From positions 148,021-212,020 of IMG/VR virus record IMGVR_UViG_3300020608_000013: 64,000 nt of DNA, one strand, 5' to 3'. The notes below the pieces were generated by a model. That model was not told the origin of the DNA. It did no database searches and worked only from the letters and a program-made list of their open reading frames with translations. The translations under genes were made by a program, and so were the position numbers. Below, piece by piece: positions 4,920 to 63,522 of this stretch (positions are counted from its first letter, which is position 1; every line of letters begins with the position of its first letter).

Positions 4920-4929
4920 TATAATATAC
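4920..4929 (-). promoter_or_regulatory. Putative phage early-promoter motif GTATATTATA
   Basis: One of 12 intergenic same-orientation copies. Confidence 0.65.
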
Positions 4930-4975
4930 GGTTGTTACATTTTATATTATAGTCAAAATAATACTAGATCGGTGT

Positions 4976-5031
4976 AAAAAAATACAAACAATAGTTCTGT
5001 ATACGGGTCAATACCCGTATACAGAACTATT
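4976..5031 (-). terminator. Intrinsic terminator ending the tail-gene operon
   Basis: Perfect 19-bp stem, 4-nt loop, T-tract downstream on the - strand. Confidence 0.8.
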
Positions 5032-5110
5032 TACTTTACAAGATTTGGCTAGATTACTATCAGTATAGATTAAGTTTCAGATAATAGAGTTTAGCCTACT
5101 AAAAATTTAC

Positions 5111-5884
5111 CTAGAATTTACTTACAAGTTGTAAAAATTGCTTATTGTTTAACGTATCTCCTTTATCAGTTTCAAGGGCATCGTCAGCATTTTGTATTTT
5201 CTGCAACCAGTCGTCGTCAAACTTAATTGACTTGTAACGCACTGTACCGCGTCGCTTTATGCCAATCCATGCCGCTGAATATAATTTTAAAAGTTTAGCA
5301 TTTTTATCCAGCACTTTACTAGACCAAATATCAGGTGTCTCGTCGCCCTTTAAACGAAGTTCGATGATAAACCGCTCATCTTCGCCCAACCCACCAATGC
5401 CCAACGACCGTATTTTTAACGCATCGTTTAGTTGAGACTCGTATGTGTCGATCTCTTTCTGGTTAGCGCGTTTTGTGAGTCGCGATAACGCTAAATCAAA
5501 ATCTTGCTCAAGCTTATCTAAACGCGCCAAAACAATACGTTCAAATGCTTCCTCAGATGCTTTCACTACACCGTTTTCTAAATAAAAACCTTTGCCCAAA
5601 TACTCGAATAAAGGGTAATTAACTAGTATCGCATTACTTGAATAACCTTTAGTGACAAATTCACCGTTCTTAGAATCAAAAACAGCATAATCAGCTTTTG
5701 TTTTTGCTGCTAACGTGTAGGTTAGGCTTTTAATATCAAGCGTGCCGTTTTCAACCGTTAAATATTGGTTTTTGGTTATTTTAGGTGAAATAACTGTTAG
5801 TGCTGGTTGTTCGGATGGGTCGATACCTGTTTTGATTAAATTAGCGTATGTTTTTACTTTATTGTCATGTAAATATAAATGCAT
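5111..5884 (-). CDS. Putative tail-fibre-associated/assembly protein (257 aa)
   Basis: Follows the fibre-like gene; helical C-terminal block (EIDTYESQLNDA) resembles tail-fibre assembly proteins. Confidence 0.4.
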   Translation of the reverse strand: MHLYLHDNKVKTYANLIKTGIDPSEQPALTVISPKITKNQYLTVENGTLDIKSLTYTLAAKTKADYAVFDSKNGEFVTKGYSSNAILVNYPLFEYLGKGFYLENGVVKASEEAFERIVLARLDKLEQDFDLALSRLTKRANQKEIDTYESQLNDALKIRSLGIGGLGEDERFIIELRLKGDETPDIWSSKVLDKNAKLLKLYSAAWIGIKRRGTVRYKSIKFDDDWLQKIQNADDALETDKGDTLNNKQFLQLVSKF

Positions 5885-5887
5885 TTC

Positions 5888-7408
5888 TTACCACTCCATT
5901 GTTAAGCTACCACCATTACTGGCGAGGTCAACAAAAACTATATGGTTAGTACCATCGGTTTTTGGTGTTAGGCTTAATACAACTTCTTCAGTTGTAGGTA
6001 GTGTGGCTACACCATAAGCCGCACCTTGAAATGTATGGGATACTGCGCCCGATACTATTGTCGGTTGACCAGGCTGCGGATTTATACCAGGTACTATAAT
6101 TTGAGCAGGATTTTCAACCCCGTATACCATCGTGTATTGACCGAATCCCCAGCTTACACCAACCAAACTTCCTGCGCCGACAGAACCTGTGCGTGTTTGT
6201 ACTCCCGCATGTGTGGTCGCTGTTATTGAGTAATTTATAGTATTCCCACTAATTGATGTTACAGATGCAGAACCTGATAAGTTACCCCCATCGCCAGGTT
6301 TATTAATAGTTAAACTATAAGTGGGTTCGCCATATACGGGTGCCACGCTAGCGACGCCGCCGCCTCCGCGACCGCGCAAAATAATGCTATCGACCAAACC
6401 ATTAATTGCATAATCGGCGCTAGTAAATGCAGTTACACTACCGCTCGGATTACCACCCATCGTTGTATTATATGTTTCAATTAGCGACTCTAAGCTACTT
6501 TCTACTGCATAGATACTAATTTCAACATTTTCACCCTCAACATGATCGCCAACATCAAAAACCAAATCATCATTATTCGGATTTTGCATCACGCTAATAC
6601 CATGATTACTACCATCAAACTTAACGTCTATAGTCGAGTTAGTGGGCTTGTTATTCACAGTCAATGTGAATGTGCTTCCGATGTATAAATTCGCAGGTAC
6701 ATCACCAGTGATTGTTGTATTACTAACGTCAGGCGGCGATGCTTCAATTATCGTAGTCGAGGCATAAACGCGTGCGAAAACATTACCCACCGCGTCTTCT
6801 AAAACAGCGTACACCTGAAAATTTTCGCCGCTAGTTAGCCCGTTGGGCAGCGTGAAAGTTAAATTTCCTGTAATACCTCGCGAAACAGTTATTGAAAATT
6901 CGCCAATTTCATCACCGTTAGCACGATATAGTTTAGCTTTGGAAATTAGTATACCGGTTAACACTGTAGAATTGGTAGTAATAGTAACTTCAATCACCTG
7001 CCCAGATAAAGCGTTTGGCGGCATTGATATTACTGTGTTTGTTTTAATAGCACTTCCAGATGGAAAATCATAAGTATCTGCCCAATTAGCGATAGCAGTA
7101 TTGAAGGAAGTAGTAAACTCGCTTTCAGTCATGCCACCTGTTGGGAAGTCGTACGTGCTCGCCCAGTTTGTAATAGCGGTGTTGAACGAAGACATGAACT
7201 CCGTTTCCGTCATACCGCCAGATGGGAAATCATAGTTGTTCGCCCAATCCGCAATCGAATTTGTAAAATAAGTAACAATTTGTGATTGGGTTAACAATAC
7301 ACCGTTGTTACCGTTGTCGTCGGTAACAAGTACTTGACCTTGAGCGGTATCTACTGTTAAGTCAATGTTTTCTTCAGGGTTTTCCTGTAGGTAGGAATAA
7401 ATTCCCAT
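5888..7408 (-). CDS. Putative tail fibre/adhesin-like virion protein (506 aa) with N-terminal 27-aa repeats and Ig-like beta domains
   Basis: T/S/G/N-rich beta-strand composition, repeats, Gly-rich C-terminus, structural context. Confidence 0.55.
   Translation of the reverse strand: MGIYSYLQENPEENIDLTVDTAQGQVLVTDDNGNNGVLLTQSQIVTYFTNSIADWANNYDFPSGGMTETEFMSSFNTAITNWASTYDFPTGGMTESEFTTSFNTAIANWADTYDFPSGSAIKTNTVISMPPNALSGQVIEVTITTNSTVLTGILISKAKLYRANGDEIGEFSITVSRGITGNLTFTLPNGLTSGENFQVYAVLEDAVGNVFARVYASTTIIEASPPDVSNTTITGDVPANLYIGSTFTLTVNNKPTNSTIDVKFDGSNHGISVMQNPNNDDLVFDVGDHVEGENVEISIYAVESSLESLIETYNTTMGGNPSGSVTAFTSADYAINGLVDSIILRGRGGGGVASVAPVYGEPTYSLTINKPGDGGNLSGSASVTSISGNTINYSITATTHAGVQTRTGSVGAGSLVGVSWGFGQYTMVYGVENPAQIIVPGINPQPGQPTIVSGAVSHTFQGAAYGVATLPTTEEVVLSLTPKTDGTNHIVFVDLASNGGSLTMEW
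7055..7273 (-). repeat. ~2.7 copies of an 81-bp/27-aa coding repeat (xSFNTAIxNWAxTYDFPxGGMTExEF)
   Basis: Visible in the translation; DNA copies differ at synonymous sites. Confidence 0.9.
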
Positions 7409-7436
7409 ATAAATACTCCCCTATAATTGAAGATTG

Positions 7437-14331: not shown

Positions 14332-14408
14332 CGAGTCTTCTCCTGTTTAACGGGTTTTCTTAAATCTACCAAGGTACGACGGCATTCACCATCGTACCTT
14401 GAGGTCGT

Positions 14409-15209: not shown

Positions 15210-15270
15210 TTTCTTTTCCTTAATGATTTAGGTTAAAGTTACTGAGCTACGCACTATGGTAACTCAACAT

Positions 15271-15280
15271 TATAATATAC
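15271..15280 (-). promoter_or_regulatory. Putative early-promoter motif GTATATTATA with imperfect downstream stem (15237-15264)
   Basis: Motif copy just downstream of a terminator. Confidence 0.7.
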
Positions 15281-15312
15281 GCCTGTATTAATTTATATTA
15301 AAACACTTTTTC

Positions 15313-15369
15313 AAAAAAAAATAAACTAGAGTAATATAGACCAAGTTGGGCAACCCAACTTGGTCTATA
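15313..15369 (-). terminator. Intrinsic terminator
   Basis: 16-bp perfect stem TATAGACCAAGTTGGG/CCCAACTTGGTCTATA; T9 tract downstream on the - strand. Confidence 0.8.
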
Positions 15370-15394
15370 CCTTCTATCAACCTGCGTAAATTCT

Positions 15395-15418
15395 AATTGT
15401 GTCGAATTCGACATAATT
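15395..15418. repeat. Near-perfect palindrome centred on TCGAATTCGA (copy 2)
   Basis: AATTGTGTCGAATTCGACATAATT, one mismatch; - strand reads FNYVEFDTIR. Confidence 0.8.
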
Positions 15419-15473
15419 AAAACATCGTCATACATACTTTTTAAACAAATCGACGTTCTTAAAGTTAATTAAT

Positions 15474-15762
15474 TCAACTATCTTTCGTCAGGAGACGTAT
15501 TTACTGAATAGCTGTTTTGTTTAACAGTTCAAGACGTTCTTGCTGTGGCGTACATTAAGCGTTTCTAGATTAGCAAAACAAGCCAGTTGCGAAACGTCTG
15601 CATACCACCGTAACGACCTACTCTACTTTGTATACCTATAGCGTTGGTAGCCTGAACCCATTCTTTAACGCTAATTATATAGCTATTCAAACCTACAACA
15701 CTTCTAATTCTATCGAATTCGATAGAATTAGAATTAGGGTTATAAATGCGTTCCCAAACGCC
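15474..15762 (-). pseudogene. Decayed KilA-N domain DNA-binding protein fragment
   Basis: Hand translation GVWERIYNPNSNSIEFDRIRSVVGLNSYIISVKEWVQATNAIGIQSRVGRYGG, frameshift, YADVSQLACFANLETLN, frameshift, QQERLELLNKTAIQ*; matches N- and C-terminal blocks of bacterial KilA-N proteins as recalled; no start codon. Confidence 0.8.
15702..15733. repeat. 32-bp perfect palindrome centred on TCGAATTCGA (copy 1)
   Basis: TTCTAATTCTATCGAA/TTCGATAGAATTAGAA. Confidence 0.9.
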
Positions 15763-15764
15763 TT

Positions 15765-17899: not shown

Positions 17900-17951
17900 A
17901 ATATTTCTCTCATGTATTTGTAGGTATTCAGGTAACTACTGTTGTGGATTA

Positions 17952-17986
17952 TTGAGCTAACGGTTTAGCTCAACACTATAATATAC
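17952..17986 (-). promoter_or_regulatory. Promoter motif (17977-17986) plus downstream 9-bp hairpin (17952-17973)
   Basis: GTATATTATA then TTGAGCTAA/TTAGCTCAA. Confidence 0.75.
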
Positions 17987-18020
17987 ACCTGTATAAATTT
18001 ACTTTACTAGGTTAGTTTAT

Positions 18021-18070
18021 AAAAAAAATACAGACACGTTGTACCCTAGAGAACACTCTCTAGGGTACAA
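18021..18070 (-). terminator. Intrinsic terminator
   Basis: 14-bp perfect stem plus T8 tract on the - strand. Confidence 0.75.
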
Positions 18071-18882: not shown

Positions 18883-18891
18883 TCGTGTTTA

Positions 18892-18933
18892 ATTAGAGGG
18901 TCTAGTGTGCTATAGCACACTAGACCCTCTAAT
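18892..18933. repeat. 42-bp perfect intergenic palindrome
   Basis: ATTAGAGGGTCTAGTGTGCTA/TAGCACACTAGACCCTCTAAT; no U-tract. Confidence 0.9.
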
Positions 18934-18946
18934 AAGTTAATTAAGA

Positions 18947-22546: not shown

Positions 22547-22587
22547 TTATGGTTGTTAAATATTTAACAACCATAATTATAATATAT
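22547..22587 (-). promoter_or_regulatory. Promoter motif (22578-22587) abutting a 30-bp perfect palindrome (22547-22576)
   Basis: ATATATTATA then TTATGGTTGTTAAAT/ATTTAACAACCATAA. Confidence 0.7.
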
Positions 22588-23588: not shown

Positions 23589-23625
23589 TATAATATACGC
23601 TACTAACTTAGTTAGTAGCGTATAT
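23589..23625 (-). terminator. Terminator hairpin (15-bp stem) whose distal arm overlaps a promoter-motif copy (23589-23598)
   Basis: ATATACGCTACTAAC-TTA-GTTAGTAGCGTATAT followed by a T-tract on the - strand. Confidence 0.65.
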
Positions 23626-23639
23626 TTCCTTCATTTCAT

Positions 23640-24902
23640 TTATGTGTAAGGGTATTCTTTCACAAACCGCGAACCTTCCGTTTCAATATACTCAATTAGA
23701 AAGTCAAGTGTGACACCCTCTTCTTTAGTTGGGTCGACTAACTTTAAGGGGATATTAAACAAGGTCTTGTATCCGTGCTTCTCTACTAACCCTGCAAAGG
23801 TAGTGTAGTCGTCTTCAGATAGTGTAGTTTTAAGGTTGTCTAACACCCACGCCTCTTTTTGATCAATACCCTTACGGTTTTGACGATGAGTGTGTAATAA
23901 CTGACCTACTACTGTTTTCAAGACCACATTATTTTCCAGATCATTAACCACTTGACTGATTTCTTCAGGTAAAGCGAGGTTTTCTGTCACGAACCCAGTA
24001 TAATGGTCAACTAATTTAATTAAAAGCTTTTCTACGAAAGTTTGCTGACTAGGTGTAATATCCGCATAATCCACACCCTGTGTAGCCACACCATCTACAA
24101 TACCTTTATCCACCGCCTCAATACAGCCTGGGGGTAGTTCATACCCCTTACAGAAGTCTGGGTAGTTTCTCGATAGTGCTGTACCGATACTCGCTAGTAA
24201 AGCAGTTTGTCTACTAACATAAACGTATTGAGGGAAAACTATTCCTTTATTAAAAAGTAGTTCATCTAGTTTATGGGCTAACGTAGTCTCGATTTCCAAT
24301 GGTGTGAGGTCTGTATCAAAAGTGTGTTGTATTGACTTCACACCACTAGTATTAAAACATGCGTTCATTGCGCGTGTCAGCTCATCCGACCCTTCCTCTT
24401 TAACAATCACCATGATCTCTTGCGCTGTAACCTCAACATCGCGGTAGATGTTAAGAATGTACATCAATTCAACAAAACGTTGCTGAACTCTTGGTTGTAG
24501 CTTACACAACAATGAAGCAGCTTGACCTCTACGTAAAGGCCGATCATAAACTTCTTCAGTCGATGGTAATGTGCCATATTCTTGACTATTTTTAATATAT
24601 CTACCATCGATAATGATGTCCTTATGGAGGAAAGGTTTCCAGTGTGATGGTACATCTAACGGGGGGCGCGGGCAATGTTCTTTAACATAGTCTTCGTCAA
24701 GGGTGGGTAGTAATTCTACCATATAGTTTCGTAACGGAATGTCGTATGCGTTTAAAGGGTTGTTATATAGTACTAATGTACTTAACAACGCTTCTTTATG
24801 TTTTAGCATGAGGGGTAGTACATCTTCAAGAGAGTGTTCACGAAATGTTCGTTCATCAGGATCAACATATGTCGTTTCCATGAATTCTTTAATAGATAAC
24901 AT
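23640..24902 (-). CDS. Hypothetical protein, family C (420 aa)
   Basis: FVELMYILNIYRDV...FNTSG block. Confidence 0.85.
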   Translation of the reverse strand: MLSIKEFMETTYVDPDERTFREHSLEDVLPLMLKHKEALLSTLVLYNNPLNAYDIPLRNYMVELLPTLDEDYVKEHCPRPPLDVPSHWKPFLHKDIIIDGRYIKNSQEYGTLPSTEEVYDRPLRRGQAASLLCKLQPRVQQRFVELMYILNIYRDVEVTAQEIMVIVKEEGSDELTRAMNACFNTSGVKSIQHTFDTDLTPLEIETTLAHKLDELLFNKGIVFPQYVYVSRQTALLASIGTALSRNYPDFCKGYELPPGCIEAVDKGIVDGVATQGVDYADITPSQQTFVEKLLIKLVDHYTGFVTENLALPEEISQVVNDLENNVVLKTVVGQLLHTHRQNRKGIDQKEAWVLDNLKTTLSEDDYTTFAGLVEKHGYKTLFNIPLKLVDPTKEEGVTLDFLIEYIETEGSRFVKEYPYT

Positions 24903-37087: not shown

Positions 37088-37127
37088 AAGTATGGTATTA
37101 TCCCTTAATACCATACTTATAATATAT
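37088..37127 (-). promoter_or_regulatory. Promoter motif (37118-37127) plus 13-bp hairpin (37088-37118)
   Basis: ATATATTATA overlapping AAGTATGGTATTA/TAATACCATACTT. Confidence 0.75.
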
Positions 37128-37906: not shown

Positions 37907-37984
37907 TTCTATTACCTTATATTAAAATTAATAGAAAGGTGGATAACTGACCACCTTTCTATACTAAACAATTAGACTATACCA

Positions 37985-39323: not shown

Positions 39324-39326
39324 TTT

Positions 39327-40061: not shown

Positions 40062-40094
40062 TGTAGTTGCCTCATATAGTGAGTTAAAATAGAT

Positions 40095-40133
40095 TATTAG
40101 TGACTAGTTTTTCTAGTCACTAATATAATATAC
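40095..40133 (-). promoter_or_regulatory. Promoter motif (40124-40133) plus 13-bp hairpin (40095-40125)
   Basis: GTATATTATA overlapping TATTAGTGACTAG/CTAGTCACTAATA. Confidence 0.75.
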
Positions 40134-40157
40134 ACCTGTAAAAAACTACATTACCAG

Positions 40158-41135: not shown

Positions 41136-41155
41136 CCCAGCTACATTTTTAAGCC

Positions 41156-41968: not shown

Positions 41969-42055
41969 AACTAATCCTTAAAATAATTTAATTAAAATGG
42001 TACAAGTTAGTGTCATAAGATACTAACTTGTATTTAAAAGACACTAAACAAGTCT

Positions 42056-42883: not shown

Positions 42884-42946
42884 AATAATGTCCTATTACT
42901 AGTAATTATGTGGGCGTGGTAGATTACAGCACTACCACGTAATTTA

Positions 42947-42981
42947 GACTATTGTTCTGAATAGCCACTTTTATAATATAT
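42947..42981 (-). promoter_or_regulatory. Promoter motif (42972-42981) plus short hairpin (42947-42966)
   Basis: ATATATTATA; GGCTATT/AATAGTC stem with a G-U pair on the - strand. Confidence 0.65.
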
Positions 42982-43175
42982 GACCATCCTATTCTAAAAT
43001 AAACTAGGCGTTAACCAATCTTTTCATAACAGCTAGTCTGTAGAGTAGTATGGGAGCACAGCCTTTATAGTGACCCCGTGGTATATTCATAGAAGACTCA
43101 CTTCTCCTAAAAAAACAATTTAATAACAGTACACGGGCTAGTGACTTTCATCATTAGCCCGTGTACTAACACGTT

Positions 43176-43955: not shown

Positions 43956-44092
43956 ATATGTCCTATTAAAGTATTTTAAATGTAGCGACCCTAGGCAGAG
44001 TGAGTCGTCACAGATAAGGGGGTAAACAGTTTAATTTAAATTCCTCTACGCAAGCGTATTATAAAACTAAACTTCTATTAAAGATATGTAAA

Positions 44093-44914
44093 TCAGTTAC
44101 AGCTACCCGTAAAGGTAACTCTCAACTTAGTCTCGCGACCACTCACCCCCTCCAGAAGGGTTATTATATCCAATTTATCGTAATTTGTATCGAAAACAAC
44201 TTCTTCTAGACACGACATGTCTAGAAGGGCTGAAATGTTTATCAACGTTGTGTTTACGACACTAATACGCTTTAGATTTTTCGGAAGTGTCGTGCAATCG
44301 ATGATAAACTCATTATCGATTAAAGATAAATCGTTTGCACGATCAAACAAAGTCCAGTCAATATCACTAGTAAAAGCACTGACCCCTTCAACACGAATTG
44401 AAATCACATCAGGGGCATATTTTTCATACCCTTGATTGTGACATACGCCATTTTGATCTTTCAGTAATGGTGAGAGTTCGTTTGGCGCGATGCCTTCGAC
44501 ACACATTCGTGTTTTGTTCGGGTTATGACCAGTTAACCACATTTCCCCTTCCGCAAAGAGAGAGGCTGTATTTTGAAGGTAGCTTTTCTGAACACTAAAG
44601 TATCCTCCCTCAGGACCTTCATATACTAGTTCATAAAAATCGCTTTCGTTAGATAGCAATATTTTAACACCCCGGTCTCGAAGCTCCTGGACCATCTCTG
44701 TATCCAATACATGACCATTTTGGTCAATATAGATGCGCTTCAAGGCTTTATAGAAGTAGAGATGTAATTCGTTGAAGGTTAGTCCTGATGTAAACAGTAC
44801 CTCTACGCTATCGACGGTTTCGTTTGTTGTGATACAACTCTCGCCTACAGCAAGCGTAGACGTGTTAGTAAAATCCACTTGTGTTAAATCGTTTGAATAG
44901 CGTAATTTAGACAT
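44093..44914 (-). CDS. LRR-like array protein (273 aa)
   Basis: GVCHNQGYEKYAPDV, LPKNLKRISV, LRDRGVKI cap; AGGAG RBS. Confidence 0.85.
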   Translation of the reverse strand: MSKLRYSNDLTQVDFTNTSTLAVGESCITTNETVDSVEVLFTSGLTFNELHLYFYKALKRIYIDQNGHVLDTEMVQELRDRGVKILLSNESDFYELVYEGPEGGYFSVQKSYLQNTASLFAEGEMWLTGHNPNKTRMCVEGIAPNELSPLLKDQNGVCHNQGYEKYAPDVISIRVEGVSAFTSDIDWTLFDRANDLSLIDNEFIIDCTTLPKNLKRISVVNTTLINISALLDMSCLEEVVFDTNYDKLDIITLLEGVSGRETKLRVTFTGSCN

Positions 44915-44981
44915 TTGTTTCTCCTAATTTAAAATTATGGGTGTGACGGTCATGTAAAACCGTCACACTTAGGGGGAAGGG

Positions 44982-45782
44982 TTATCGGTCTAGCTCGAAG
45001 ATTAGATCGAACATTTCGCCCTTCACTTCGTTGCAAATTTTATTGAAAAGCCGAAAATCTTCTCCAATAACCTTAAGTGTTGATAGGTTTGGGTGGTGTG
45101 CTAGCGCACCAATATTTGTTAGTACTGAGGTGTTTACAGTCAGGGTTGAAAGACTGGCGGGCAGTGTCCCGCAATCTACAGGATATGAGGTTTTAAACAA
45201 CACTAACTCTCTAACCTTGGTGAAACGAGCGAAATCCAGTGATTCCATAAAGCGATTCACGCTATCTAGTTCCAGATATTGTACATCACCTGCAATTTTT
45301 TCATATCCTACATTAAGACATAGACCTGAATGAAAATGCAATACTTCTGCACGCATATTTTCTTCTAATAAATGTTCTCCTAGTCCCTCTAGTACAAGCG
45401 CTTGATCGTCAAATAAATCGCTCTCAAGAACGGGAGTGAAATTACCTACTTCAAAAACCTTACCGTTTGGGAGGTAGACTTCCGTGGTCTCTGAGATTAA
45501 GTTACGTAAACCTCCTTTCCAGATAACCTCAACGCCTCGGCGTTGAAGGGCATTTAGATGATCACCAGGCTCTTGCACACGCCCGACATAGATGCGTTTA
45601 AGATTTGGGAAGCCCTCGACGCATTTTAGTAACTCACCATTTACTAAACCGTCTGTAAAAACGGTTTCAACTGAATCGAAGTTAGGTTTAATGAACATAT
45701 TCTCCTTAACTCCCATAAGACCCATAGTGATGTTTTGGACATTAGTGTTACCGTCGAAAGATTTTAAGCTGTAAGTTTTCAT
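44982..45782 (-). CDS. LRR-like array protein (266 aa)
   Basis: FPNLKRIYV, GLCLNVGYEKIAGDV, LPASLSTLTV, HPNLSTLKV. Confidence 0.85.
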   Translation of the reverse strand: MKTYSLKSFDGNTNVQNITMGLMGVKENMFIKPNFDSVETVFTDGLVNGELLKCVEGFPNLKRIYVGRVQEPGDHLNALQRRGVEVIWKGGLRNLISETTEVYLPNGKVFEVGNFTPVLESDLFDDQALVLEGLGEHLLEENMRAEVLHFHSGLCLNVGYEKIAGDVQYLELDSVNRFMESLDFARFTKVRELVLFKTSYPVDCGTLPASLSTLTVNTSVLTNIGALAHHPNLSTLKVIGEDFRLFNKICNEVKGEMFDLIFELDR

Positions 45783-45813
45783 AGTACTTTCCTATTAATG
45801 TTTAAATGTTAAT

Positions 45814-45849
45814 GAATGACTAGCCCTATTACTAGTCACTCTTATAATA
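45814..45849 (-). promoter_or_regulatory. Variant promoter motif (CTATTATA) plus 10-bp hairpin
   Basis: GAGTGACTAG/CTAGTCATTC with a G-U pair on the - strand; flanks resemble the 63486 copy. Confidence 0.55.
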
Positions 45850-45863
45850 GCGTTTTTGTAAAA

Positions 45864-46676
45864 CTACGCTAATTTAAAATACAAATTGAAATAAGCGTCT
45901 ACATTCGCGTTGTGAATTTTATGGTAAAGGTCTAAATTATCATCAACGATAACAACTTTCCCCAACTCTTCTAGTTTGTTTAGTGCCGATAGGTTGGTCA
46001 ACCCAACACCACCGACAGTCAATTCAGTAAGCGTTTGTGGTAGGTCTGCACAATCTAACTGGAAATTACCTACATCAAATAACTCAACATAAGTTAAATT
46101 CTTAAACAGAGTAATGTCTAAAGGACTTTGGAACTTATTGACATTGTTAATGTGTAGGGATACTACGTCTTCAGCGTAACACTCGTATCCGCGATTTAGG
46201 CAACGGCCTTTATTCTCATCTAAAAAGTTTTGACTATACTCATTAGGTTTGAATGAATTATCATCAAACCCCTCAAGGAAGAGCGCACTTAAGCCGTAAA
46301 GATGACGTTCTGTAAAGTGGATGAAAGACGGTACTTCTAAACTCTTTCCACTACTAGTGTGCAATGTTGTGTAGCGTGAAACTAGTCTCTCTACTTCGTA
46401 AGAGGTGCGTACGTCGACCCCTCTTTCTAGTAGAGGGGTGAACACGGTTGTTGGTTTATCTGTATCCGCATATACTCGTTTGAGGTTTTCCAAATCAGTT
46501 AGGCGTTCAATTTGATCACCCGTAGGTTCATTAAAGAAAAAGATTCTTTCAACATTTCTCAGCCAGCCACTTTCAGGCAGGTCGGTGTCTCTCGCCATAA
46601 CTAATGTCTTTACATTAGTGGTAGGGGAGGTTAAGGTTTCTAAAACGGTATTTTCTAAAGTTTGGTAGGTTTTCAT
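45864..46676 (-). CDS. LRR-like array protein (270 aa)
   Basis: LENLKRVYA, GRCLNRGYECYAEDV, LPQTLTELTV. Confidence 0.85.
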   Translation of the reverse strand: MKTYQTLENTVLETLTSPTTNVKTLVMARDTDLPESGWLRNVERIFFFNEPTGDQIERLTDLENLKRVYADTDKPTTVFTPLLERGVDVRTSYEVERLVSRYTTLHTSSGKSLEVPSFIHFTERHLYGLSALFLEGFDDNSFKPNEYSQNFLDENKGRCLNRGYECYAEDVVSLHINNVNKFQSPLDITLFKNLTYVELFDVGNFQLDCADLPQTLTELTVGGVGLTNLSALNKLEELGKVVIVDDNLDLYHKIHNANVDAYFNLYFKLA

Positions 46677-46767
46677 TTCGTTTCCCTTTTAAATTCAATG
46701 TGCTAATTAGATGGATTGATAAACACTCATCACTCATATAGTGATGAGTGCTATATGTCGGTGACTT

Positions 46768-47301
46768 CTACTTACGTTTTCTCTTACCTTTCTTCACATT
46801 AATATCCTTTTCTTTTTTACGATAAATGCGGTAGGGTATGTTATCATCCGTAATTTTTTCTAGACAGTAATTATATCCTTTTATTAAAGAACATAATTGC
46901 TCTTTAGAGACAATTACATAAGGTATATAACATAGGGGTAGATTAGAAAAGAAATTTTTAGCGAACCGCTCTCTCGCTCCCTTTTTCCCGACTGGTTTAA
47001 GATCAGTAATGCGTCTTTTTTGAACGACTCCATTCACTGTATAATAGCTAAACACATTAACATGATCCGTACCTTTGGTTTCAAACCCGCAATAAGGTGT
47101 AGCTTTCAGAAGTTTTAAATGGTCTCGTCCAGTTTTAGGGACAACTGCTTCAGCCGCTACTACGTTAGCCTCCTTAATAGCCTTCTCAGACCCAATTTCT
47201 ATAATGTTTTTAGGAATATAGCTAATCTTACCATTCGCCATAATACCCAACGGCAATGTAGCTAACAAAACAGTTAGAGTGATGGTTAAACTATGTTTCA
47301 T
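46768..47301 (-). CDS. Predicted secreted protein with Sec signal peptide and basic tail (177 aa)
   Basis: MKHSLTITLTVLLATLPLGIMA-N; ends KKGKRKRK; similar to 37985..38509. Confidence 0.75.
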   Translation of the reverse strand: MKHSLTITLTVLLATLPLGIMANGKISYIPKNIIEIGSEKAIKEANVVAAEAVVPKTGRDHLKLLKATPYCGFETKGTDHVNVFSYYTVNGVVQKRRITDLKPVGKKGARERFAKNFFSNLPLCYIPYVIVSKEQLCSLIKGYNYCLEKITDDNIPYRIYRKKEKDINVKKGKRKRK

Positions 47302-47356
47302 ATTTACTCCAATTGACTATAGGGTAGTCAGCCCTATAGCCCAACAAGAACCCTCT

Positions 47357-48259
47357 CTAGTTAGTAAGGTAGTTAGAGAAGAACACCTCGATTGCGTTAT
47401 CATTAAACCTGTCAAAGACTCCATTATAGGATTCTAACAATGATGGTGTCAGCTCATCTTCCACGATAACCCGTTTTAAACTCCTATGAGACCAAAGTGT
47501 TTTAGGGTTCATTAGTTTTGTATTTTTCAATCCCAATTGCGTAGCTGCTGACGGAATGAGTTTACAGTCAAACTCACCTATATGGTTAACCACCTTCACA
47601 GTATAGAGATTTTTAAATAGGCTTAAGTCTATACCCACATCTCTAGTCGATGCGTTGAGCCACGTCAGTTTATTGACGTAAGGGGCGTAATTACGATACC
47701 CCTCGGTCATCACATTACCTGACAAAGCACTACCTATTTCTATCAGTGTGTTGTAGTTTAAGTAGCCATCTGACTCGACGGGACGGGCTTCTAAACTATT
47801 CTCATCTATTCCTGAGAAAACCATTTCACCAAGCCCTAGTAGACTTTCTCTCCATTGCCTTATTGATGTTCTAACATCATAAAGAAGACCATCGTGTTCA
47901 ATAGTCGTTTTATCGACAACAGATTCTTCATTATATAGACTAACCCCTACTTTCCGTAGGTATTTAATGAGTTCGTCATTTTGAGCGTTATTATAGTCAC
48001 CTGTCACGAAGATAGCTTTAAGCCCTCCAGCTATTTCATTTATGAAGCGAGTTGTGAGGTGAGGTAACACCTCGTTAGTAGCATAAAGCACCTCTAACGA
48101 ACGAAGGTCTTTAGCTATTTTCAACGAACTGTAGTCAAATCTATCGGAAAGGATGAGTGTCTCTACGTGTGAGAGATCAATGTCAGGGAAACTACCTTCC
48201 TGTAAAAATAAGATTGGGTGTTGAACCTTACCAAATGTGTGGGTATTAATAATGTCCAT
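47357..48259 (-). CDS. LRR-like array protein (300 aa)
   Basis: LRSLEVLYA, EGYRNYAPYV, FKNLYTVKV. Confidence 0.8.
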   Translation of the reverse strand: MDIINTHTFGKVQHPILFLQEGSFPDIDLSHVETLILSDRFDYSSLKIAKDLRSLEVLYATNEVLPHLTTRFINEIAGGLKAIFVTGDYNNAQNDELIKYLRKVGVSLYNEESVVDKTTIEHDGLLYDVRTSIRQWRESLLGLGEMVFSGIDENSLEARPVESDGYLNYNTLIEIGSALSGNVMTEGYRNYAPYVNKLTWLNASTRDVGIDLSLFKNLYTVKVVNHIGEFDCKLIPSAATQLGLKNTKLMNPKTLWSHRSLKRVIVEDELTPSLLESYNGVFDRFNDNAIEVFFSNYLTN

Positions 48260-48301
48260 TATAATTTCCTTTTACTTTCTATTAAGGGAGGGGGTAGTTT
48301 C

Positions 48302-49201
48302 CTACCCTCTCGTTGATAAGCTCTGCAATTTTTTAATTAGTGTAGGTTGAATCGTACCGCCCGCATCAGGTAGTGGTTGCGCTAGATCGTTGTTGAACAA
48401 TCTAGTGCTTTGGGCAGAGACACCTTCTTTAAAAACAAAACTTTCAAAGTTCCGCGAACTAAGAAGCACGTCTATGTTTTTAAGTAGAGTGTGTTCCGCC
48501 TCTACGTGCGTAAGTGACGGAGGTAATTCTTCGCAATCGACCCATTCAGCAATTTTCACTTTCAGCTCTGTTAGTTGAGTGAACGATGACCAGTTTATTG
48601 GTTGCGTATACTCATCTACGTTTTTCACTATCACTTTAACAACGTACGGCGCAAGTATCTCTACTTGCTCAGACACGCAAACATTAAGAGGTTGATTGAG
48701 CATCCCAATCGCGTCTGAAAGGCTCGCACCCTCAAGAATTACTCGATGGCTTTCAGCATCTCGCCCTTGTAGCGTCAAAACACCTTCTTCAAAAAGTAGG
48801 AATTGGTCGGCGTATACCGTACTCTCGACCTTTAGCGTATACTCGCCATCAACTAACGACACCCAACGGGGTATTTTATCTGTAAAGTTACTCCGTGTGA
48901 AGACATTAATACCTCTCTGTTCTAACTCCGCCTCATAAGGGTTAGTATTTTTGAACGAGTCCCTTACAAATATGGCTTTCAAATTACTGAACTTGCCCAT
49001 GTACTCAGGCAACGCCTTCGCACTTCCGTAATTTATATAAAACACTTCAATATCGTCAATATTACCCGCCTCGGCCAGTTTATAAATATAAGCATCGTCT
49101 TGTACTATTACAACGCCACAACCTTTAAAATCAACACCCTTCTCTAACATATCGGAGGTTAATTTCCGATCTCGAACTTCTTTAAACAACAACATAGTCA
49201 T
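48302..49201 (-). CDS. LRR-like array protein (299 aa)
   Basis: FSNLKAIFV, FTQLTELKV, LPPSLTHVEA; LEQRGINV cap. Confidence 0.8.
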   Translation of the reverse strand: MTMLLFKEVRDRKLTSDMLEKGVDFKGCGVVIVQDDAYIYKLAEAGNIDDIEVFYINYGSAKALPEYMGKFSNLKAIFVRDSFKNTNPYEAELEQRGINVFTRSNFTDKIPRWVSLVDGEYTLKVESTVYADQFLLFEEGVLTLQGRDAESHRVILEGASLSDAIGMLNQPLNVCVSEQVEILAPYVVKVIVKNVDEYTQPINWSSFTQLTELKVKIAEWVDCEELPPSLTHVEAEHTLLKNIDVLLSSRNFESFVFKEGVSAQSTRLFNNDLAQPLPDAGGTIQPTLIKKLQSLSTRG

Positions 49202-49206
49202 TTCTC

Positions 49207-50067
49207 CTACTTACGGTTACAAGTTACATTAACACCTTTATCGTTCAATGCGCTAAGCGTATCCACTAGCACAAATGAACCATCGTTCTCGACGACATTA
49301 TTTAAAGACACAATTTTCAAATTGGGTAATTCGGTTAAGTGTGCTATGTTGTTCAACACACTTTCTTCAACATGTAGATACTCTACTGATCTAGGGATGT
49401 TATGGGCATCAAAGATACTATTTTCTATCCGAACCTCTGGCGTATTGTAATCACTCCAATTCGGCTCTGTTATGAAAACATCGGTATTTTTCACCTTTAA
49501 TGTTATAGCCTCTCCAACATACCCCGCAAACCCTGCGCCGTTGCACACTTTATTTTTCCCATATTGGGTAAAATATTTTTCAACCTCTCTACTACTTACA
49601 CCATCTGTCTTTAACAAGAGGTCGCGCCATTCTACTCCTTCCAAAATAAATGTTCCTGACTCAAAGAACTCTTTTAGGTTGTTAAAGAAAGAACTCATCG
49701 TCGCTACTTCAAAATCTGTAGGTCTATCGGGTAACGTCATCCAGTCATTACAACAGGTATCATCACCCTCCCAGTATATATCTACAGGGTAGCTAGATAT
49801 TCTATCCTCAAATGACTCAAAGCTGTCTTTATAATCAACCCCTCTTAAATTAAGCGTGGAAACTTTCCATAAATGCCCAAGACTTACCTCTAGGTCGATA
49901 AGGTGTTTCATATTACAGAAAATACACTTAACGTCGCTGACAGTGTGGTTATTCTTTAATAGATCAATATCAACATCATCTGCGACGTACATTATTTCAA
50001 TCCCTGTGAAATCGTTATTCACGTCTTCACTACACACACGGTTACTAACCCTATGTTTTTCACACAT
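49207..50067 (-). CDS. LRR-like array protein (286 aa)
   Basis: IPRSVEYLHV, LPNLKIVSL; LNDKGVNV cap. Confidence 0.8.
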   Translation of the reverse strand: MCEKHRVSNRVCSEDVNNDFTGIEIMYVADDVDIDLLKNNHTVSDVKCIFCNMKHLIDLEVSLGHLWKVSTLNLRGVDYKDSFESFEDRISSYPVDIYWEGDDTCCNDWMTLPDRPTDFEVATMSSFFNNLKEFFESGTFILEGVEWRDLLLKTDGVSSREVEKYFTQYGKNKVCNGAGFAGYVGEAITLKVKNTDVFITEPNWSDYNTPEVRIENSIFDAHNIPRSVEYLHVEESVLNNIAHLTELPNLKIVSLNNVVENDGSFVLVDTLSALNDKGVNVTCNRK

Positions 50068-50091
50068 ATTAATTGCCTCTTAAATAGTTAA

Positions 50092-50128
50092 ACGACCACT
50101 TTAATTAGTAGTCGCTTTTATAATATAC
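50092..50128 (-). promoter_or_regulatory. Promoter motif (50119-50128) plus 9-bp hairpin with G-U pairs
   Basis: GTATATTATA; GCGACTACT/AGTGGTCGT on the - strand. Confidence 0.7.
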
Positions 50129-50932: not shown

Positions 50933-50963
50933 GCCTCACTCACTATAATAAAAAAGATGGTTT

Positions 50964-51007
50964 AAAAAAACAAAGGAGACTAGGGTGTCGAACACCCTAG
51001 TCTCCTT
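50964..51007 (-). terminator. Intrinsic terminator
   Basis: 15-bp perfect stem, TTCGA loop, T7 tract on the - strand. Confidence 0.85.
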
Positions 51008-51011
51008 AGTA

Positions 51012-55354: not shown

Positions 55355-56260
55355 CTACACTCCTGTATATAAATCACTGCTTGTTAAATTTGGTTCATAA
55401 TAATCTACACTCCATCTTAACTCATTCTCAAGACCTGAGTTATTAGTATCGCGGTTAACGATACTATCAAGATAGTCTGCCAAATCATCAAAATTCTCAT
55501 CATCTCTAAAAATAATAACGCCTTGACCGTTAAGTCTATTTAAGAATTTTCGATGTTTGTTAAAATACGACAACTCCACATCGACTTGATGTAGATGGGG
55601 TAGTGTGAGTAACGCTTCCTCGCTTTTTAATGACGCGTTGCTTAAATAAAGGTATTCGACACTTGGTCCTATATACGAACAATCAAACGGCGCTGGATTA
55701 TCGCAAATTGCGAGCATTTGTAGATTAGGAAGCCTACTAATAAAACTAACCTCAGTCATATCAGTTTCCCATAACCATAGGGTCGAAATAGCTTCTAATA
55801 TAATGTGATCATTATCAATGCCATATAGCGAATGGGCAAAAACCGATTCTTCTAACCAGAAATCTTCGTTACTCAACGCGTCTATCACGCTACCGCGTAG
55901 CGCCTTTGGGTACTTAAACACATACTGAGCGATACCAATAACATCACAGTGTGTTCTTATAGTATCAGGCACTTCCCCATCTTTATGAACAATTAGGCGT
56001 TTTAAATCTGGGGCGACCTTTGGTAGTGCGTCTATATTACGCCAAGTGGCGTTACTTATATTCAATACCCGCACACCCGTCAAGTCAAGTTTTTCTAAAT
56101 CGATGAAATTCTCATAACACACTGTTAGTATGCTAACAGTGTCTATGCCAACAGCGTCAATCCAACCGATGTCGTCATTATCCTCAATAATAAATTCAAC
56201 ATTATTTTTACGGGCTTTGTTTTTCAAAAAACGAGCATTAACTCTATCTACTTTGTACAT
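55355..56260 (-). CDS. LRR-like array protein (301 aa)
   Basis: LTGVRVLNISN, LPNLQMLAICDN, VEYLYLSN, LPHLHQVDV. Confidence 0.85.
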   Translation of the reverse strand: MYKVDRVNARFLKNKARKNNVEFIIEDNDDIGWIDAVGIDTVSILTVCYENFIDLEKLDLTGVRVLNISNATWRNIDALPKVAPDLKRLIVHKDGEVPDTIRTHCDVIGIAQYVFKYPKALRGSVIDALSNEDFWLEESVFAHSLYGIDNDHIILEAISTLWLWETDMTEVSFISRLPNLQMLAICDNPAPFDCSYIGPSVEYLYLSNASLKSEEALLTLPHLHQVDVELSYFNKHRKFLNRLNGQGVIIFRDDENFDDLADYLDSIVNRDTNNSGLENELRWSVDYYEPNLTSSDLYTGV

Positions 56261-56282: not shown

Positions 56283-56320
56283 TAAAGTTGAGTCGTTTTT
56301 GACTCAACTTTATAATATAT
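56283..56320 (-). promoter_or_regulatory. Promoter motif (56311-56320) plus 12-bp hairpin (56283-56312)
   Basis: ATATATTATA overlapping TAAAGTTGAGTC/GACTCAACTTTA. Confidence 0.75.
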
Positions 56321-62082: not shown

Positions 62083-62292
62083 TTAAGTTTCAAACGGAGT
62101 AAAGCTCCATTTTACACGTATGTGGTTCTCTGACAGCATAGAGATGTACCCCTCTATCAAAACGTCAGGGTATGCTCTAGCTACCTGGGAAACCATTTCT
62201 ATTTCAAGGTCGCGTTTATTTAAAACGACATCCCCAGCCGTCTCAAAGGCTAGAGTATTGGCAACTCTATCCATATAGGTTTGTATACTCAT
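62083..62292 (-). CDS. Hypothetical protein (69 aa)
   Basis: ORF track; ATGA overlap. Confidence 0.7.
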   Translation of the reverse strand: MSIQTYMDRVANTLAFETAGDVVLNKRDLEIEMVSQVARAYPDVLIEGYISMLSENHIRVKWSFTPFET

Positions 62293-62783
62293 TCCACTTT
62301 ACTCCCTTTAACAGCAAGTTCGTATTTATCGCTCTTCGTTTTACTATAATAGACAATACTAAAGTTATCGAAATTTACGCCCTCGATCACACTTGTGACC
62401 TCTTCTACCTCAACAGGTGTCGCTCCACCCAACTTAGCAGAGACTTGGGCTGACAACGCTCTGTCATAAATAAATGTCTTTTTAAGATACCAAGACACAT
62501 CTTTAAAAAAACGACTCAATAACCCACGACCATCTTTTTTAAACGCAACATGGATTTTTATATGCGTTGTACCGTCTTTATGGCCGTTACTCTCGAATTG
62601 AGTAATAATAACATCATCACTCCAACCGACGAACACGTCGTCGATGACACCTTGAAGTGTGTAAAGTGTCGGGAGAGTGCTGTCGTAATAATGTTCTATT
62701 AGGGCACTGTGCGTTTTGATTCGCGTATTCGCGGCCATGTTCTTTAGTTCGTCAGAATAAATAATTTTAAATGTACTACTCAT
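62289..62783 (-). CDS. Hypothetical protein, pair G (164 aa)
   Basis: GVNFDNFSIVY...YELAVKG shared with 62987..63457. Confidence 0.8.
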   Translation of the reverse strand: MSSTFKIIYSDELKNMAANTRIKTHSALIEHYYDSTLPTLYTLQGVIDDVFVGWSDDVIITQFESNGHKDGTTHIKIHVAFKKDGRGLLSRFFKDVSWYLKKTFIYDRALSAQVSAKLGGATPVEVEEVTSVIEGVNFDNFSIVYYSKTKSDKYELAVKGSKVE

Positions 62784-62808
62784 GATTTTTACCTTAGTTT
62801 AATAATAA

Positions 62809-62845
62809 ATGGTTACGCGGTATTGTAACCATCTTTATAATATAC
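62809..62845 (-). promoter_or_regulatory. Promoter motif (62836-62845) plus 8-bp hairpin
   Basis: GTATATTATA; ATGGTTAC/GTAACCAT. Confidence 0.7.
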
Positions 62846-62986
62846 GCCCGACCTATTTTATAATAAAGTATTTTACACTATCAACGTAAATATAACATTA
62901 CAAAGTGGTGTAAGAAATAAAAAAAATAGAGCTAGATAATTATGTATGCCGTGAAACAATGTCACGACATACTCAATAATAAGAGA

Positions 62987-63457
62987 CTAAATAGTCTTAC
63001 CTTTCACGGACACATCATATCCGTCTTGGTTGCGAAGGTAGACTATCTTAAATTCCTTAAAGCGTAAACCTTTATAAAGCTGCCCTAGATTTATTTTGCG
63101 AAGGTCTAATGGTAAGTCACGCTCCTCTCTAGCGATGTTGGTAAAATGTTTTGTCAGTTCCTTTGACTCTAGTCCAAAAACTGAGCCTAGGTCTAAGCTA
63201 CGTAAGCGATGTGAGAATAATAAGTCTAGTGATTCTAGTCTTTCTTCCTTAGCGGCGACTAAAACTTTAACTTCGACATCATTCCCTTTAATAACACTTT
63301 CATACCTTAACACAGAGGCATTGCAATGTATTTTAAACACTTCATTAAGCTCTGCTAATGTCTTAGCATTCTTAATTTTAACTGCATCGCGTACTTCATC
63401 AAAATTGATTTCTTTACTTAGTTTAAGACTTAGGTGTAATGAGTAGGTTGTTTTCAT
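62987..63457 (-). CDS. Hypothetical protein, pair G (156 aa)
   Basis: GLRFKEFKIVY...YDVSVKG. Confidence 0.8.
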   Translation of the reverse strand: MKTTYSLHLSLKLSKEINFDEVRDAVKIKNAKTLAELNEVFKIHCNASVLRYESVIKGNDVEVKVLVAAKEERLESLDLLFSHRLRSLDLGSVFGLESKELTKHFTNIAREERDLPLDLRKINLGQLYKGLRFKEFKIVYLRNQDGYDVSVKGKTI

Positions 63458-63485
63458 GGTAATTCCCTATTTGATGTTTAAAAGA

Positions 63486-63522
63486 GTGGCTAGTTCTATT
63501 ACTAGTCACCTTTATAATATAC
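63486..63522 (-). promoter_or_regulatory. Promoter motif (63513-63522) plus 9-bp hairpin (one mismatch)
   Basis: GTATATTATA; GTGACTAGT/ACTAGCCAC. Confidence 0.7.

What the first reader, a model, noticed from the sequence alone, without database searches (positions are those of the whole stretch)
4920..63522. Twelve copies of a (G/A)TATATTATA motif, usually fused to a downstream hairpin: promoter-plus-stem-loop architecture
Seen: + strand TATAATATA(C/T) occurs at 4920, 15271, 17977, 22578, 23589, 37118, 40124, 42972, 50119, 56311, 62836 and 63513, with a variant at 45843. All are intergenic, all face - strand genes, and none lies in the 5.1-10.9 kb structural block. Ten of the 13 sites have a 7-15-bp stem beginning within a few nt downstream or overlapping the motif end; 15271 has only an imperfect stem, and 4920 and 23589 lack one. 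Stem sequences differ, so structure rather than sequence is conserved. Known: phiKZ early promoters read by the virion RNA polymerase have an AT-rich TATTAC-type core; N4 virion RNAP uses DNA hairpin promoters. Inference: early promoters for a virion RNAP, with either a 5' mRNA-protecting stem or a DNA-structure element.
Basis: partly seen in the sequence, partly recalled or inferred. Interest (0 to 1): 0.65.

Follow-up and report, generated by a model that had tools for sequence, protein, structure and literature searches.

The report
Jumbo-phage early promoters with start-site hairpins
The repeated motif is the core of the early promoters that a giant (phiKZ-like) phage's injected RNA polymerase most likely reads, an ordinary feature of such phages; the unusual part is that most copies start transcription inside a stable stem-loop, which the two best-studied relatives do not have.

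Summary
TATAATATAY occurs 12 times in the window, all on one strand, against 1.2 expected. The 212-kb phage genome has 24 such sites, all intergenic and all facing leftward genes. The 10-mer is the core of a roughly 50-bp promoter: an AT-rich block at -35..-25, then C-R-TATATTAT-A, four variable bases, and T(-1)G(+1). It has the same geometry as the experimentally mapped virion-RNA-polymerase promoters of AR9 (ATATATTAT-6N-G) and phiKZ (TATATTAC...TG). The genome encodes two sets of split multisubunit RNA polymerase genes.

The hairpin coupling is also real. A stem of at least 7 bp starts at -8..+2 of the predicted start in 17 of 24 sites, against 20% of control intergenic positions. AR9 and phiKZ early promoters lack it.

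- Nearly every leftward spacer has a strong stem-loop, with or without a promoter.
- The stems run 4-7 bp upstream of the predicted start.
- Site 23589 is probably not a promoter.

The evidence points to an RNA-level role, either 5'-end protection or insulation of read-through transcripts. It does not fit an N4-type DNA hairpin promoter. No RNA data exist, so start sites and function remain inferred. This is a new variant of a known kind and of moderate interest.

The parts
63513..63522 (-). Promoter core GTATATTATA. Predicted start is G at 63507.
63485..63510 (-). Stem-loop from -3 to +23, with one A-C mismatch (-8.2 kcal/mol).
   Evidence: Identical in relative L041.
62836..62845 (-). Promoter core. 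Predicted start is G at 62830.
62807..62834 (-). Stem-loop from -4 to +24 (-10.6 kcal/mol).
56311..56320 (-). Promoter core. Predicted start is G at 56305.
56283..56312 (-). 12-bp stem-loop from -7 to +23 (-15.1 kcal/mol).
50119..50128 (-). Promoter core. Predicted start is G at 50113.
50090..50117 (-). 11-bp stem-loop with two G-U pairs, from -4 to +24 (-13.0 kcal/mol).
45843..45852 (-). Variant core CGCTATTATA. Predicted start is G at 45837.
   Evidence: In relatives a canonical core lies 14 nt downstream of this variant.
45814..45841 (-). 11-bp stem-loop from -4 to +24 (-14.3 kcal/mol).
42972..42981 (-). Promoter core. Predicted start is G at 42966.
42947..42966 (-). 7-bp stem-loop from +1 to +20 with a G-U pair at +2.
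   Evidence: Relatives carry A-U at that pair and changed loop bases.
42915..42939 (-). Second 8-bp stem-loop, +28 to +52 of the same leader.
   Evidence: In relatives 8 of the 9 loop bases are changed while the stem is intact; indels lie only in the loop.
40124..40133 (-). Promoter core. Predicted start is G at 40118.
40095..40125 (-). 13-bp stem-loop from -7 to +24 (-16.0 kcal/mol).
37118..37127 (-). Promoter core. Predicted start is G at 37112.
37088..37118 (-). 13-bp stem-loop from -6 to +25 (-13.9 kcal/mol).
   Evidence: Relative L042 breaks the -4/-3 pairs without compensation.
23589..23598 (-). Exact 10-mer but a doubtful promoter. It has C-1/T+1, no downstream stem, and its 5' half is the 3' arm of an upstream 16-bp stem followed by a T9 run.
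22578..22587 (-). Promoter core. Predicted start is G at 22572.
22547..22576 (-). 12-13-bp stem-loop from -4 to +26 (-13.7 kcal/mol).
17977..17986 (-). Promoter core. Predicted start is G at 17971.
17950..17975 (-). 11-bp stem-loop from -4 to +22 (-11.8 kcal/mol).
15271..15280 (-). Promoter core. Predicted start is G at 15265.
15240..15269 (-). Imperfect stem-loop that reaches 11 pairs only with three G-U pairs (-9.6 kcal/mol).
4920..4929 (-). Promoter core. Predicted start is G at 4914.
4900..4915 (-). Weak 5-6-bp stem-loop (-2.1 kcal/mol).

Best explanation
The window is the early-gene end of a divergent phiKZ-like jumbo phage.

The (G/A)TATATTATA motif is the -10-like core of a roughly 50-bp promoter, most likely read by the virion-packaged multisubunit RNA polymerase. 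Transcription is predicted to start at the invariant G seven bases after TATTAT. This is inferred from identical geometry with the mapped AR9 and phiKZ early promoters.

The inverted repeat that follows acts as an RNA stem-loop, not as a DNA promoter element. Because the start lies inside the 5' arm, each early mRNA begins with a base-paired 5' end, with 5-9 bp of stem remaining. This would shield it from 5'-end-dependent decay by RppH and RNase E or RNase J types of enzyme. That function is inferred.

The same palindrome is 4-7 bp longer in transcripts that read through from upstream. There it probably serves as the generic intergenic stem-loop found in nearly all spacers of this genome, acting as an attenuator or a barrier to decay. 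That role is also inferred.
For: Promoter:
- 12 copies against 1.2 expected, all on one strand. There are 24 sites genome-wide, all intergenic with 30-60-nt leaders.
- T-1 is present in 20 of 24 sites and G+1 in 23 of 24. Positions -12..-7 are invariant, and there is an upstream AT-rich block.
- The geometry is the same as AR9 (PMC5312081) and phiKZ. Such motifs are stated to exist in every jumbo phage that encodes its own RNA polymerases (PMC7598289).
- Two RNA polymerase gene sets are present.
- No -35 element is present, and sigma-70-like sites are not enriched.
- Rightward blocks carrying sheath, terminase and other structural genes have no copies.

Hairpin:
- A stem of at least 7 bp starts at -8..+2 in 17 of 24 sites, against 20% of control intergenic positions (p = 8e-8). 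For stems of at least 9 bp the figures are 10 of 24 against 9%.
- The first three transcript bases are paired with mean probability 0.73, against 0.35 for shuffles, 0.19 for AR9 and 0.30 for phiKZ.
- There are about 12 different stem sequences.
- The internal mismatches are 4 G-U, 0 A-C and 0 other.
- In relatives at 92-99% identity, the transcribed stem shows one event, G-U to A-U. Loops changed freely.
- 5' stem-loops are known to stabilise bacterial mRNA (PMC3997798).
Against: - No transcription start or RNA half-life has been measured. No RNA run holds this phage.
- Stems extend 3.2 bp on average upstream of the predicted start, against 1.7 in permutations. 5'-end protection does not require this.
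- Strong stem-loops also fill promoter-less spacers, at the same distance from the next start codon. The stem is therefore not specific to promoters.
- The divergent promoters at genome positions 131386 and 143675 lack stems.
- AR9 and phiKZ do without such stems.
- Evidence from relatives rests on very few substitutions.
Confidence: 0.6

Rival explanations
1. Self-insulating promoter-terminator module. The full 10-13-bp stem terminates or attenuates transcripts that arrive from upstream. Transcripts that start inside its 5' arm carry a shortened stem and escape. On this reading 5'-end protection is incidental.
For: - Stems extend 4-7 bp upstream of the predicted start, more than permutation gives.
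- Removing these pairs roughly halves the folding energy, from about -14 to about -7 kcal/mol.
- Stem-loops are generic in spacers.
- Divergent promoters with no upstream co-directional gene lack them.
- The tails are somewhat T-rich, 4.8 T in 10 nt. phiKZ terminators need only a TTAT-type tail (PMC10914365).
- Terminators lying just downstream of promoters are reported in 201phi2-1 (PMC11512511).
Against: - Five or six of these promoters already have a separate long stem plus a T7-9 run upstream.
- Only 1 of the 4 promoter stems in 36-52 kb passes a terminator scan.
- The shortened stems remain stable, at 5-9 bp.
- One relative breaks the upstream extension without compensation.
Confidence: 0.2
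2. The stem-loops are simply the generic intergenic hairpins of this genome. Their contact with the promoter is a by-product of very short spacers and has no function tied to the start site.
For: Nearly every leftward spacer has a stem-loop 20-35 nt before the next start codon, whether or not a promoter is present.
Against: - The stem start falls in a 10-nt window around the predicted start in 17 of 24 sites, against 20% for other positions in the same kind of spacer.
- The order is always promoter, then stem.
- Spacers that already have an upstream hairpin still carry a second one at the start site.
Confidence: 0.1
3. The palindrome is a DNA-structure promoter element in the manner of phage N4, a hairpin or cruciform extruded from supercoiled injected DNA.
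For: - These are perfect 26-31-bp palindromes with short loops, next to an easily melted AT-rich element.
- The complementarity extends into non-transcribed bases.
Against: - The N4 hairpin is GC-rich, has a 3-nt loop, is centred at -11 upstream of the start, and is read by a single-subunit polymerase (PMC4496689).
- Here the stem is AT-rich, with 4-8-nt variable loops, is centred near +10 and would bury the start site.
- The mismatches are G-U only on the sense strand.
- Seven of 24 promoters have no stem of at least 7 bp starting at -8..+2.
- The homologous AR9 and phiKZ promoters work without one.
Confidence: 0.04
4. The motif is a -10-only promoter for the host sigma-70 RNA polymerase.
For: TATTAT differs from TATAAT at one base, and the spacing to G+1 fits the geometry of the host polymerase.
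Against: - There is no -35 element and no TG extension. Only one site scores 9 of 12 in the scan, and the region is not enriched (49 found against 45 expected).
- Ten or more positions are invariant, far stricter than host promoters.
- phiKZ-type phages are known to transcribe independently of host polymerase (PMC7598289).
Confidence: 0.05

Closest known systems
AR9 (Bacillus jumbo phage) early promoters read by the virion RNA polymerase, AAATATATATTAT-(6N)-G+1
   Same: The core ATATATTAT is identical, with the same 6-nt gap to an invariant G start. Both recur upstream of early gene arrays, and both phages have two multisubunit RNA polymerases.
   Different: The 30 of 33 AR9 copies that were analysed show no start-site stem: mean best stem 5.8 bp and 5'-end pairing probability 0.19. 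AR9 has uracil DNA and 28% G+C (the G+C figure is from my own knowledge). This phage's nearest polymerase relatives are only about 26-34% identical.
phiKZ early promoters (TTTAAACAG-TATATTAC-N4-TG)
   Same: Both have a bipartite AT-rich upstream block plus a TATATTA(C/T) core, with T-1/G+1 at the same distance.
   Different: The last core base is C rather than T. There is no consistent downstream stem: mean best stem 5.6 bp and 5'-end pairing probability 0.30.
5'-terminal stabilising stem-loops (ompA and papA leaders; the T7 gene 10 leader, from my own knowledge)
   Same: A stem-loop begins at or within about 1 nt of the transcript's first base, well upstream of the ribosome-binding site. It is known to block RppH and RNase E access (PMC3997798).
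   Different: Here the stem-loop is deployed systematically at one promoter class of a phage, and the complementarity continues upstream of the start. Its function is untested.
Phage N4 early promoter hairpins
   Same: Both involve a virion-packaged polymerase and an inverted repeat at the promoter.
   Different: Position, composition, loop size and polymerase type all differ. See the membership rows.
Promoter-proximal terminators in jumbo phage 201phi2-1 (T055 and T056 after P033 and P034)
   Same: A stem-loop lies immediately downstream of a phage promoter and is proposed to control timing (PMC11512511).
   Different: [quoted passage not shown] Here they are at predicted early promoters, overlap the start and mostly lack a U-tract.

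Membership tests
Jumbo-phage virion-RNAP early promoters (phiKZ/AR9 type) | Highly conserved AT-rich element of about 10 nt centred near -10, recurring upstream of gene arrays. | tested here: met
   12 copies in the window against 1.2 expected. There are 24 sites genome-wide, all on one strand and all intergenic. Positions -12..-7 are invariant.
Jumbo-phage virion-RNAP early promoters (phiKZ/AR9 type) | Conserved purine start 6 nt downstream of the element. | tested here: met
   G is present at that position in 23 of 24 sites, preceded by T in 20 of 24. This is a sequence result only; the start itself has not been mapped.
Jumbo-phage virion-RNAP early promoters (phiKZ/AR9 type) | The genome encodes two sets of split beta/beta'-like multisubunit RNA polymerase genes. 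| tested here: met
   Genome 75709-79790 matches phrog_3015 and PF00562. Genome 122583-128218 matches phrog_3148 (1340 aa) and phrog_2986.
Jumbo-phage virion-RNAP early promoters (phiKZ/AR9 type) | Transcripts appear first after infection, without new protein synthesis and independently of host polymerase. | not testable with these tools
   No RNA run holds this uncultivated phage.
N4-type DNA hairpin promoters | GC-rich hairpin with a 3-nt loop, centred at -11 upstream of the start, with conserved stem and loop bases. | tested here: not met
   The stems span -7..+26, are about 34% G+C, have 4-8-nt loops and differ in sequence. The N4 features are taken from PMC4496689.
N4-type DNA hairpin promoters | Single-subunit T7-like giant virion polymerase. 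| tested here: inconclusive
   PF00940 gave no match, but the control genomes did not ring either. The genome does carry multisubunit polymerase genes instead.
5'-terminal stabilising stem-loops | The stem begins within about 0-2 nt of the RNA 5' end. | tested here: met
   With the predicted start, bases 1-3 are paired with probability above 0.5 in 18 of 24 sites.
5'-terminal stabilising stem-loops | The stem lengthens mRNA half-life. | not testable with these tools
   This needs decay assays.
Intrinsic (rho-independent) terminators | G+C-rich stem directly followed by a U-tract. | tested here: not met
   Only 40124 of the four promoter stems in 36-52 kb passes the scan. Three of 11 tails have at least 6 T in 10 nt. 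The canonical-looking elements lie upstream of the promoters instead.
Host sigma-70 promoters | A -35 hexamer 16-18 bp upstream of the -10 hexamer. | tested here: not met
   Only 37118 scores 9 of 12. Counts in the region equal shuffles.

The most novel reading that the evidence does not exclude
The palindrome and promoter form one dual-use module. Read from upstream, the full 10-13-bp stem insulates each early transcription unit by attenuation or as a 3' decay barrier. The virion polymerase starts inside the 5' arm, so its own transcript escapes that block and keeps a protective 5'-terminal stem. This would be a compact way for an RNA polymerase for which no sigma-like factor is known (from own knowledge; not tested here) to run many independent early units on one strand. 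It is absent from phiKZ and AR9.
Probability: 0.2. Interest if true: 0.6.

Novelty: new variant of a known kind. Interest (0 to 1): 0.4.

Why it matters
Early promoters of jumbo phages that encode their own RNA polymerases are a known class, and finding them in a new lineage is routine annotation.

The systematic placement of the predicted start inside a stable stem-loop, in 17 of 24 promoters, is not seen in the two reference phages examined here. If it acts on RNA, this lineage solves early-mRNA survival or transcription-unit insulation in cis. phiKZ, by contrast, uses a protein inhibitor of the degradosome (from my own knowledge).

The promoter-plus-stem modules are short and modular. They could serve as test substrates for virion RNA polymerases and as parts for phage engineering. 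They also give 24 precise predictions of start sites for any future transcriptome of this uncultivated phage.

Tried and rejected
- Near-identity DNA search in the phage collection found no match.
- Looking for relatives with the nvRNAP-like beta protein found none in viral contigs. The protein database held only a 99% twin and a 25% hit. The vRNAP-like large subunit has relatives at 34% identity at best.
- A scan of viral contigs with the promoter pattern returned only single, apparently chance hits.
- A search for RNA-seq runs found no RNA holder. DNA holders come from biofilm, marine and hydrothermal metagenomes.
- Laying contigs on 37060-43059 showed relatives at about 95-98% identity. The table of differences was cut before the sites of interest, and only loop indels at 42922-42931 were usable. 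The variants were recovered instead through cluster members and their contigs. Too few substitutions exist for a formal covariation test.
- Rfam and tRNA scans of the window found nothing.
- A literature search for a report of start-site hairpins at jumbo-phage early promoters found none in the papers read.
- Distant relatives (L224, L228) have a different repeated motif with a short stem in 2 of 3 copies, which is too few to use.
- The idea that the start lies at -4, where many stems begin, was rejected. There is no purine preference at -4, whereas T-1/G+1 is invariant and matches mapped starts in AR9 and phiKZ.

Full report
**Observation**

The + strand 10-mer TATAATATAY occurs 12 times at exactly the reported coordinates and never on the other strand. 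Dinucleotide-preserving shuffles give 1.22 copies, with a maximum of 4. Read on the - strand, it is (G/A)TATATTATA upstream of leftward genes.

The window is the last 64 kb of a 212,020-bp IMG/VR virus record. That record has a 141-bp terminal repeat, which is probably an assembly overlap. Genome-wide there are 19 exact copies, all on the - strand. There are 24 sites of the form TATATTAT-N6-G, counting the 45843 variant and the doubtful 23589 site. All are intergenic, with predicted leaders mostly of 30-60 nt.

**What phage this is**

One open frame carries the RNA polymerase Rpb2_6 domain. It is about 26% identical to the non-virion RNA polymerase beta subunits of Erwinia RAY-like phages and of phiKZ.

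PHROG scans show two polymerase gene sets. One is at genome 75709-79790. The other, at 122583-128218, comprises a 1340-aa and a 535-aa protein. The scans also find a phiKZ-type major head protein, tail sheath, terminase and DNA polymerases.

This is therefore a divergent phiKZ-like jumbo phage. Its closest database relatives for the polymerase subunits are at 25-34% identity, apart from near-identical environmental variants. DNA holders come from biofilm, marine and hydrothermal-vent metagenomes, and no RNA run holds it.

**The motif is part of a larger promoter**

Aligning the 24 sites on the conserved G gives the following pattern:
- positions -12..-7, TATTAT, are invariant;
- T-14 and A-13 are nearly invariant;
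- C-16 is present in 17 of 24 sites and A-6 in 21 of 24;
- T-1 is present in 20 of 24 and G+1 in 23 of 24;
- A+2 is present in 18 of 24;
- a second AT-rich block lies at -35..-25.

The mapped AR9 early promoter consensus is AAATATATATTAT-(6N)-G+1. The phiKZ and phiR1-37 starts also lie 6 nt downstream of their elements (PMC5312081). I fetched the phiKZ copies, and they read TTTAAACAG-TATATTAC-N4-TG, with the same geometry.

A review states that such a motif can be found upstream of presumed early operons in every jumbo phage that encodes its own RNA polymerases, and that it proved to be the early promoter wherever it was tested (PMC7598289).

There is no -35 hexamer, and sigma-70-like sites are not enriched (49 against 45 expected). 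None of the sites lies on the + strand, which carries the sheath, the terminase and other large structural genes.

I conclude with high confidence, but without RNA evidence, that these are virion-polymerase early promoters that start at the conserved G.

**Site 23589 is probably an exception**

This site differs from the others in several ways:
- It has C-1/T+1 in place of T-1/G+1 and no downstream stem.
- Its 5' half is the 3' arm of a 16-bp upstream stem, which is followed by a spacer and a T9 run.
- A close relative carries TATTAC there.

About one chance copy per window is expected.

**The stem-loops**

The stems are 7-13 bp and -4 to -16 kcal/mol, and they start between -7 and +1.

The coupling to the predicted start is statistically strong.
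- Genome-wide, a stem of at least 7 bp (G-U allowed) starts at -8..+2 in 17 of 24 sites. The figure is 20% for other positions in the same kind of spacer and 10% for random genome positions (p = 8e-8).
- For stems of at least 9 bp the figures are 10 of 24 against 9% (p = 2e-5).
- The first three bases of the predicted transcripts are paired with mean probability 0.73. Shuffles give 0.35, AR9 early transcripts 0.19 and phiKZ early transcripts 0.30.

AR9 and phiKZ early promoters have no comparable stem. The papers I read on phiKZ, 201phi2-1, AR9 and phiR1-37 transcription mention none.

**Three qualifications**

First, strong stem-loops of 10-23 bp fill almost every leftward intergenic spacer, with or without a promoter, and typically end 20-35 nt before the next start codon. 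Several promoters also have a separate long stem upstream, followed after 7-16 nt by a T7-9 run.

Second, the promoter-proximal stems continue upstream of the predicted start. The mean extension is 3.2 bp against 1.7 when the flanks are permuted among sites (Monte-Carlo p < 5e-5), and the most common starting point is -4. Protection of the RNA 5' end does not need those pairs.

Third, the divergent promoters at genome positions 131386 and 143675 have no stem, and 91665 has only 6 bp. No co-directional transcription can arrive from upstream at these sites.

**RNA or DNA**

Within the promoter-proximal stems, the four internal non-Watson-Crick positions are all G-U on the sense strand, with none A-C. 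Further G-U pairs occur in the stems of 15271, 50119, 45843 and 42972.

Environmental variants at 92-99% identity were recovered through protein clusters. In them:
- The transcribed part of the stems shows a single event, G-U to A-U at +2 of the 42972 stem.
- Loops changed at 4 of 67 positions.
- The loop of the second stem in that leader changed at 8 of 9 bases with its stem intact, and indels fall only in that loop.
- The only change that breaks pairing is at -4/-3 of the 37118 stem, upstream of the predicted start, and it is not compensated.

These counts are small. They point to selection on a sense-strand RNA structure, strongest in the transcribed part.

The N4 promoter hairpin is GC-rich, has a 3-nt loop, is centred at -11 and is read by a single-subunit polymerase (PMC4496689). 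None of these features is met here.

**Mechanism**

The best-supported reading has three parts:
- The virion polymerase starts at G+1, inside the 5' arm of an intergenic palindrome.
- The mRNA therefore begins base-paired. In bacteria this blocks RppH and 5'-end-dependent RNase E or RNase J attack (PMC3997798).
- The longer version of the stem, which is present only in read-through RNA, acts as the generic spacer stem-loop, either as an attenuator or as a decay barrier.

The main rival is that insulation is the primary function and that starting inside the arm serves to escape it. The upstream extension, the generic spacer stems and the bare divergent promoters favour this rival. The separate upstream terminator-like elements, the poor U-tracts and the uncompensated break in a relative argue against it. 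I cannot separate these two readings from sequence alone.

**Verdict**

- The promoter interpretation is supported by homology of sequence and geometry with mapped promoters, and this part is a known kind of feature.
- The start-site stem-loop is a real, lineage-specific addition of uncertain function, most likely acting at the RNA level.
- The N4-like DNA-hairpin idea is not supported.

The read-laying run was kept to 6,000 bases.

Noticed in passing
window 12196-62082, e.g. 18883-18946, 14332-14408, 44915-44981, 50933-51011: Nearly every leftward intergenic spacer holds a strong stem-loop of 10-23 bp, with or without a promoter. The stem usually ends 20-35 nt before the next start codon, and most lack a U-tract.
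   Followed up: partly
window 37160-37215, 18000-18060, 15300-15370, 4985-5050, 23599-23640: These are terminator-like elements with an unusual layout: a long stem of 13-19 bp, then a 7-16-nt spacer, then a T7-9 run. They lie upstream of several early promoters. The reason for the gap between the stem and the T-run is unexplained.
   Followed up: no
window 40158-50067; relatives L044 1-330 and L052 1050-1255: There is a tandem family of ten paralogous genes of about 245-325 aa and unknown function. Environmental relatives lack about 43001-45843, which holds three paralogs. The junction lies inside the promoter modules, so these modules seem to be recombination points.
   Followed up: partly
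window 15210-15764: This is a 555-nt ORF-free spacer with several long perfect palindromes upstream of promoter 15271. It has no tRNA and no Rfam match.
   Followed up: no
window 55355-56260: The first gene after promoter 56311 encodes a 301-aa protein with a leucine-rich repeat (LRR_4, E = 7e-9). Products of the other nine early genes tested have no Pfam match.
   Followed up: no
L224 23064-23110 and 23798-23845; L228 10230-10290: Distant relatives (virion-polymerase large subunit 34% identical) also have hairpin-rich spacers. They carry a different repeated AT-rich motif, AGTyACATATAyCTATAyTGAAkT. In 2 of 3 copies a short stem starting at GGGAA follows it, so this may be the same architecture with another promoter sequence.
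   Followed up: partly
genome 1-141 and 211880-212020 (window 63860-64000): The 141-bp direct terminal repeat of the record is most likely an assembly overlap of a circular or permuted genome rather than a biological terminal repeat.
   Followed up: no
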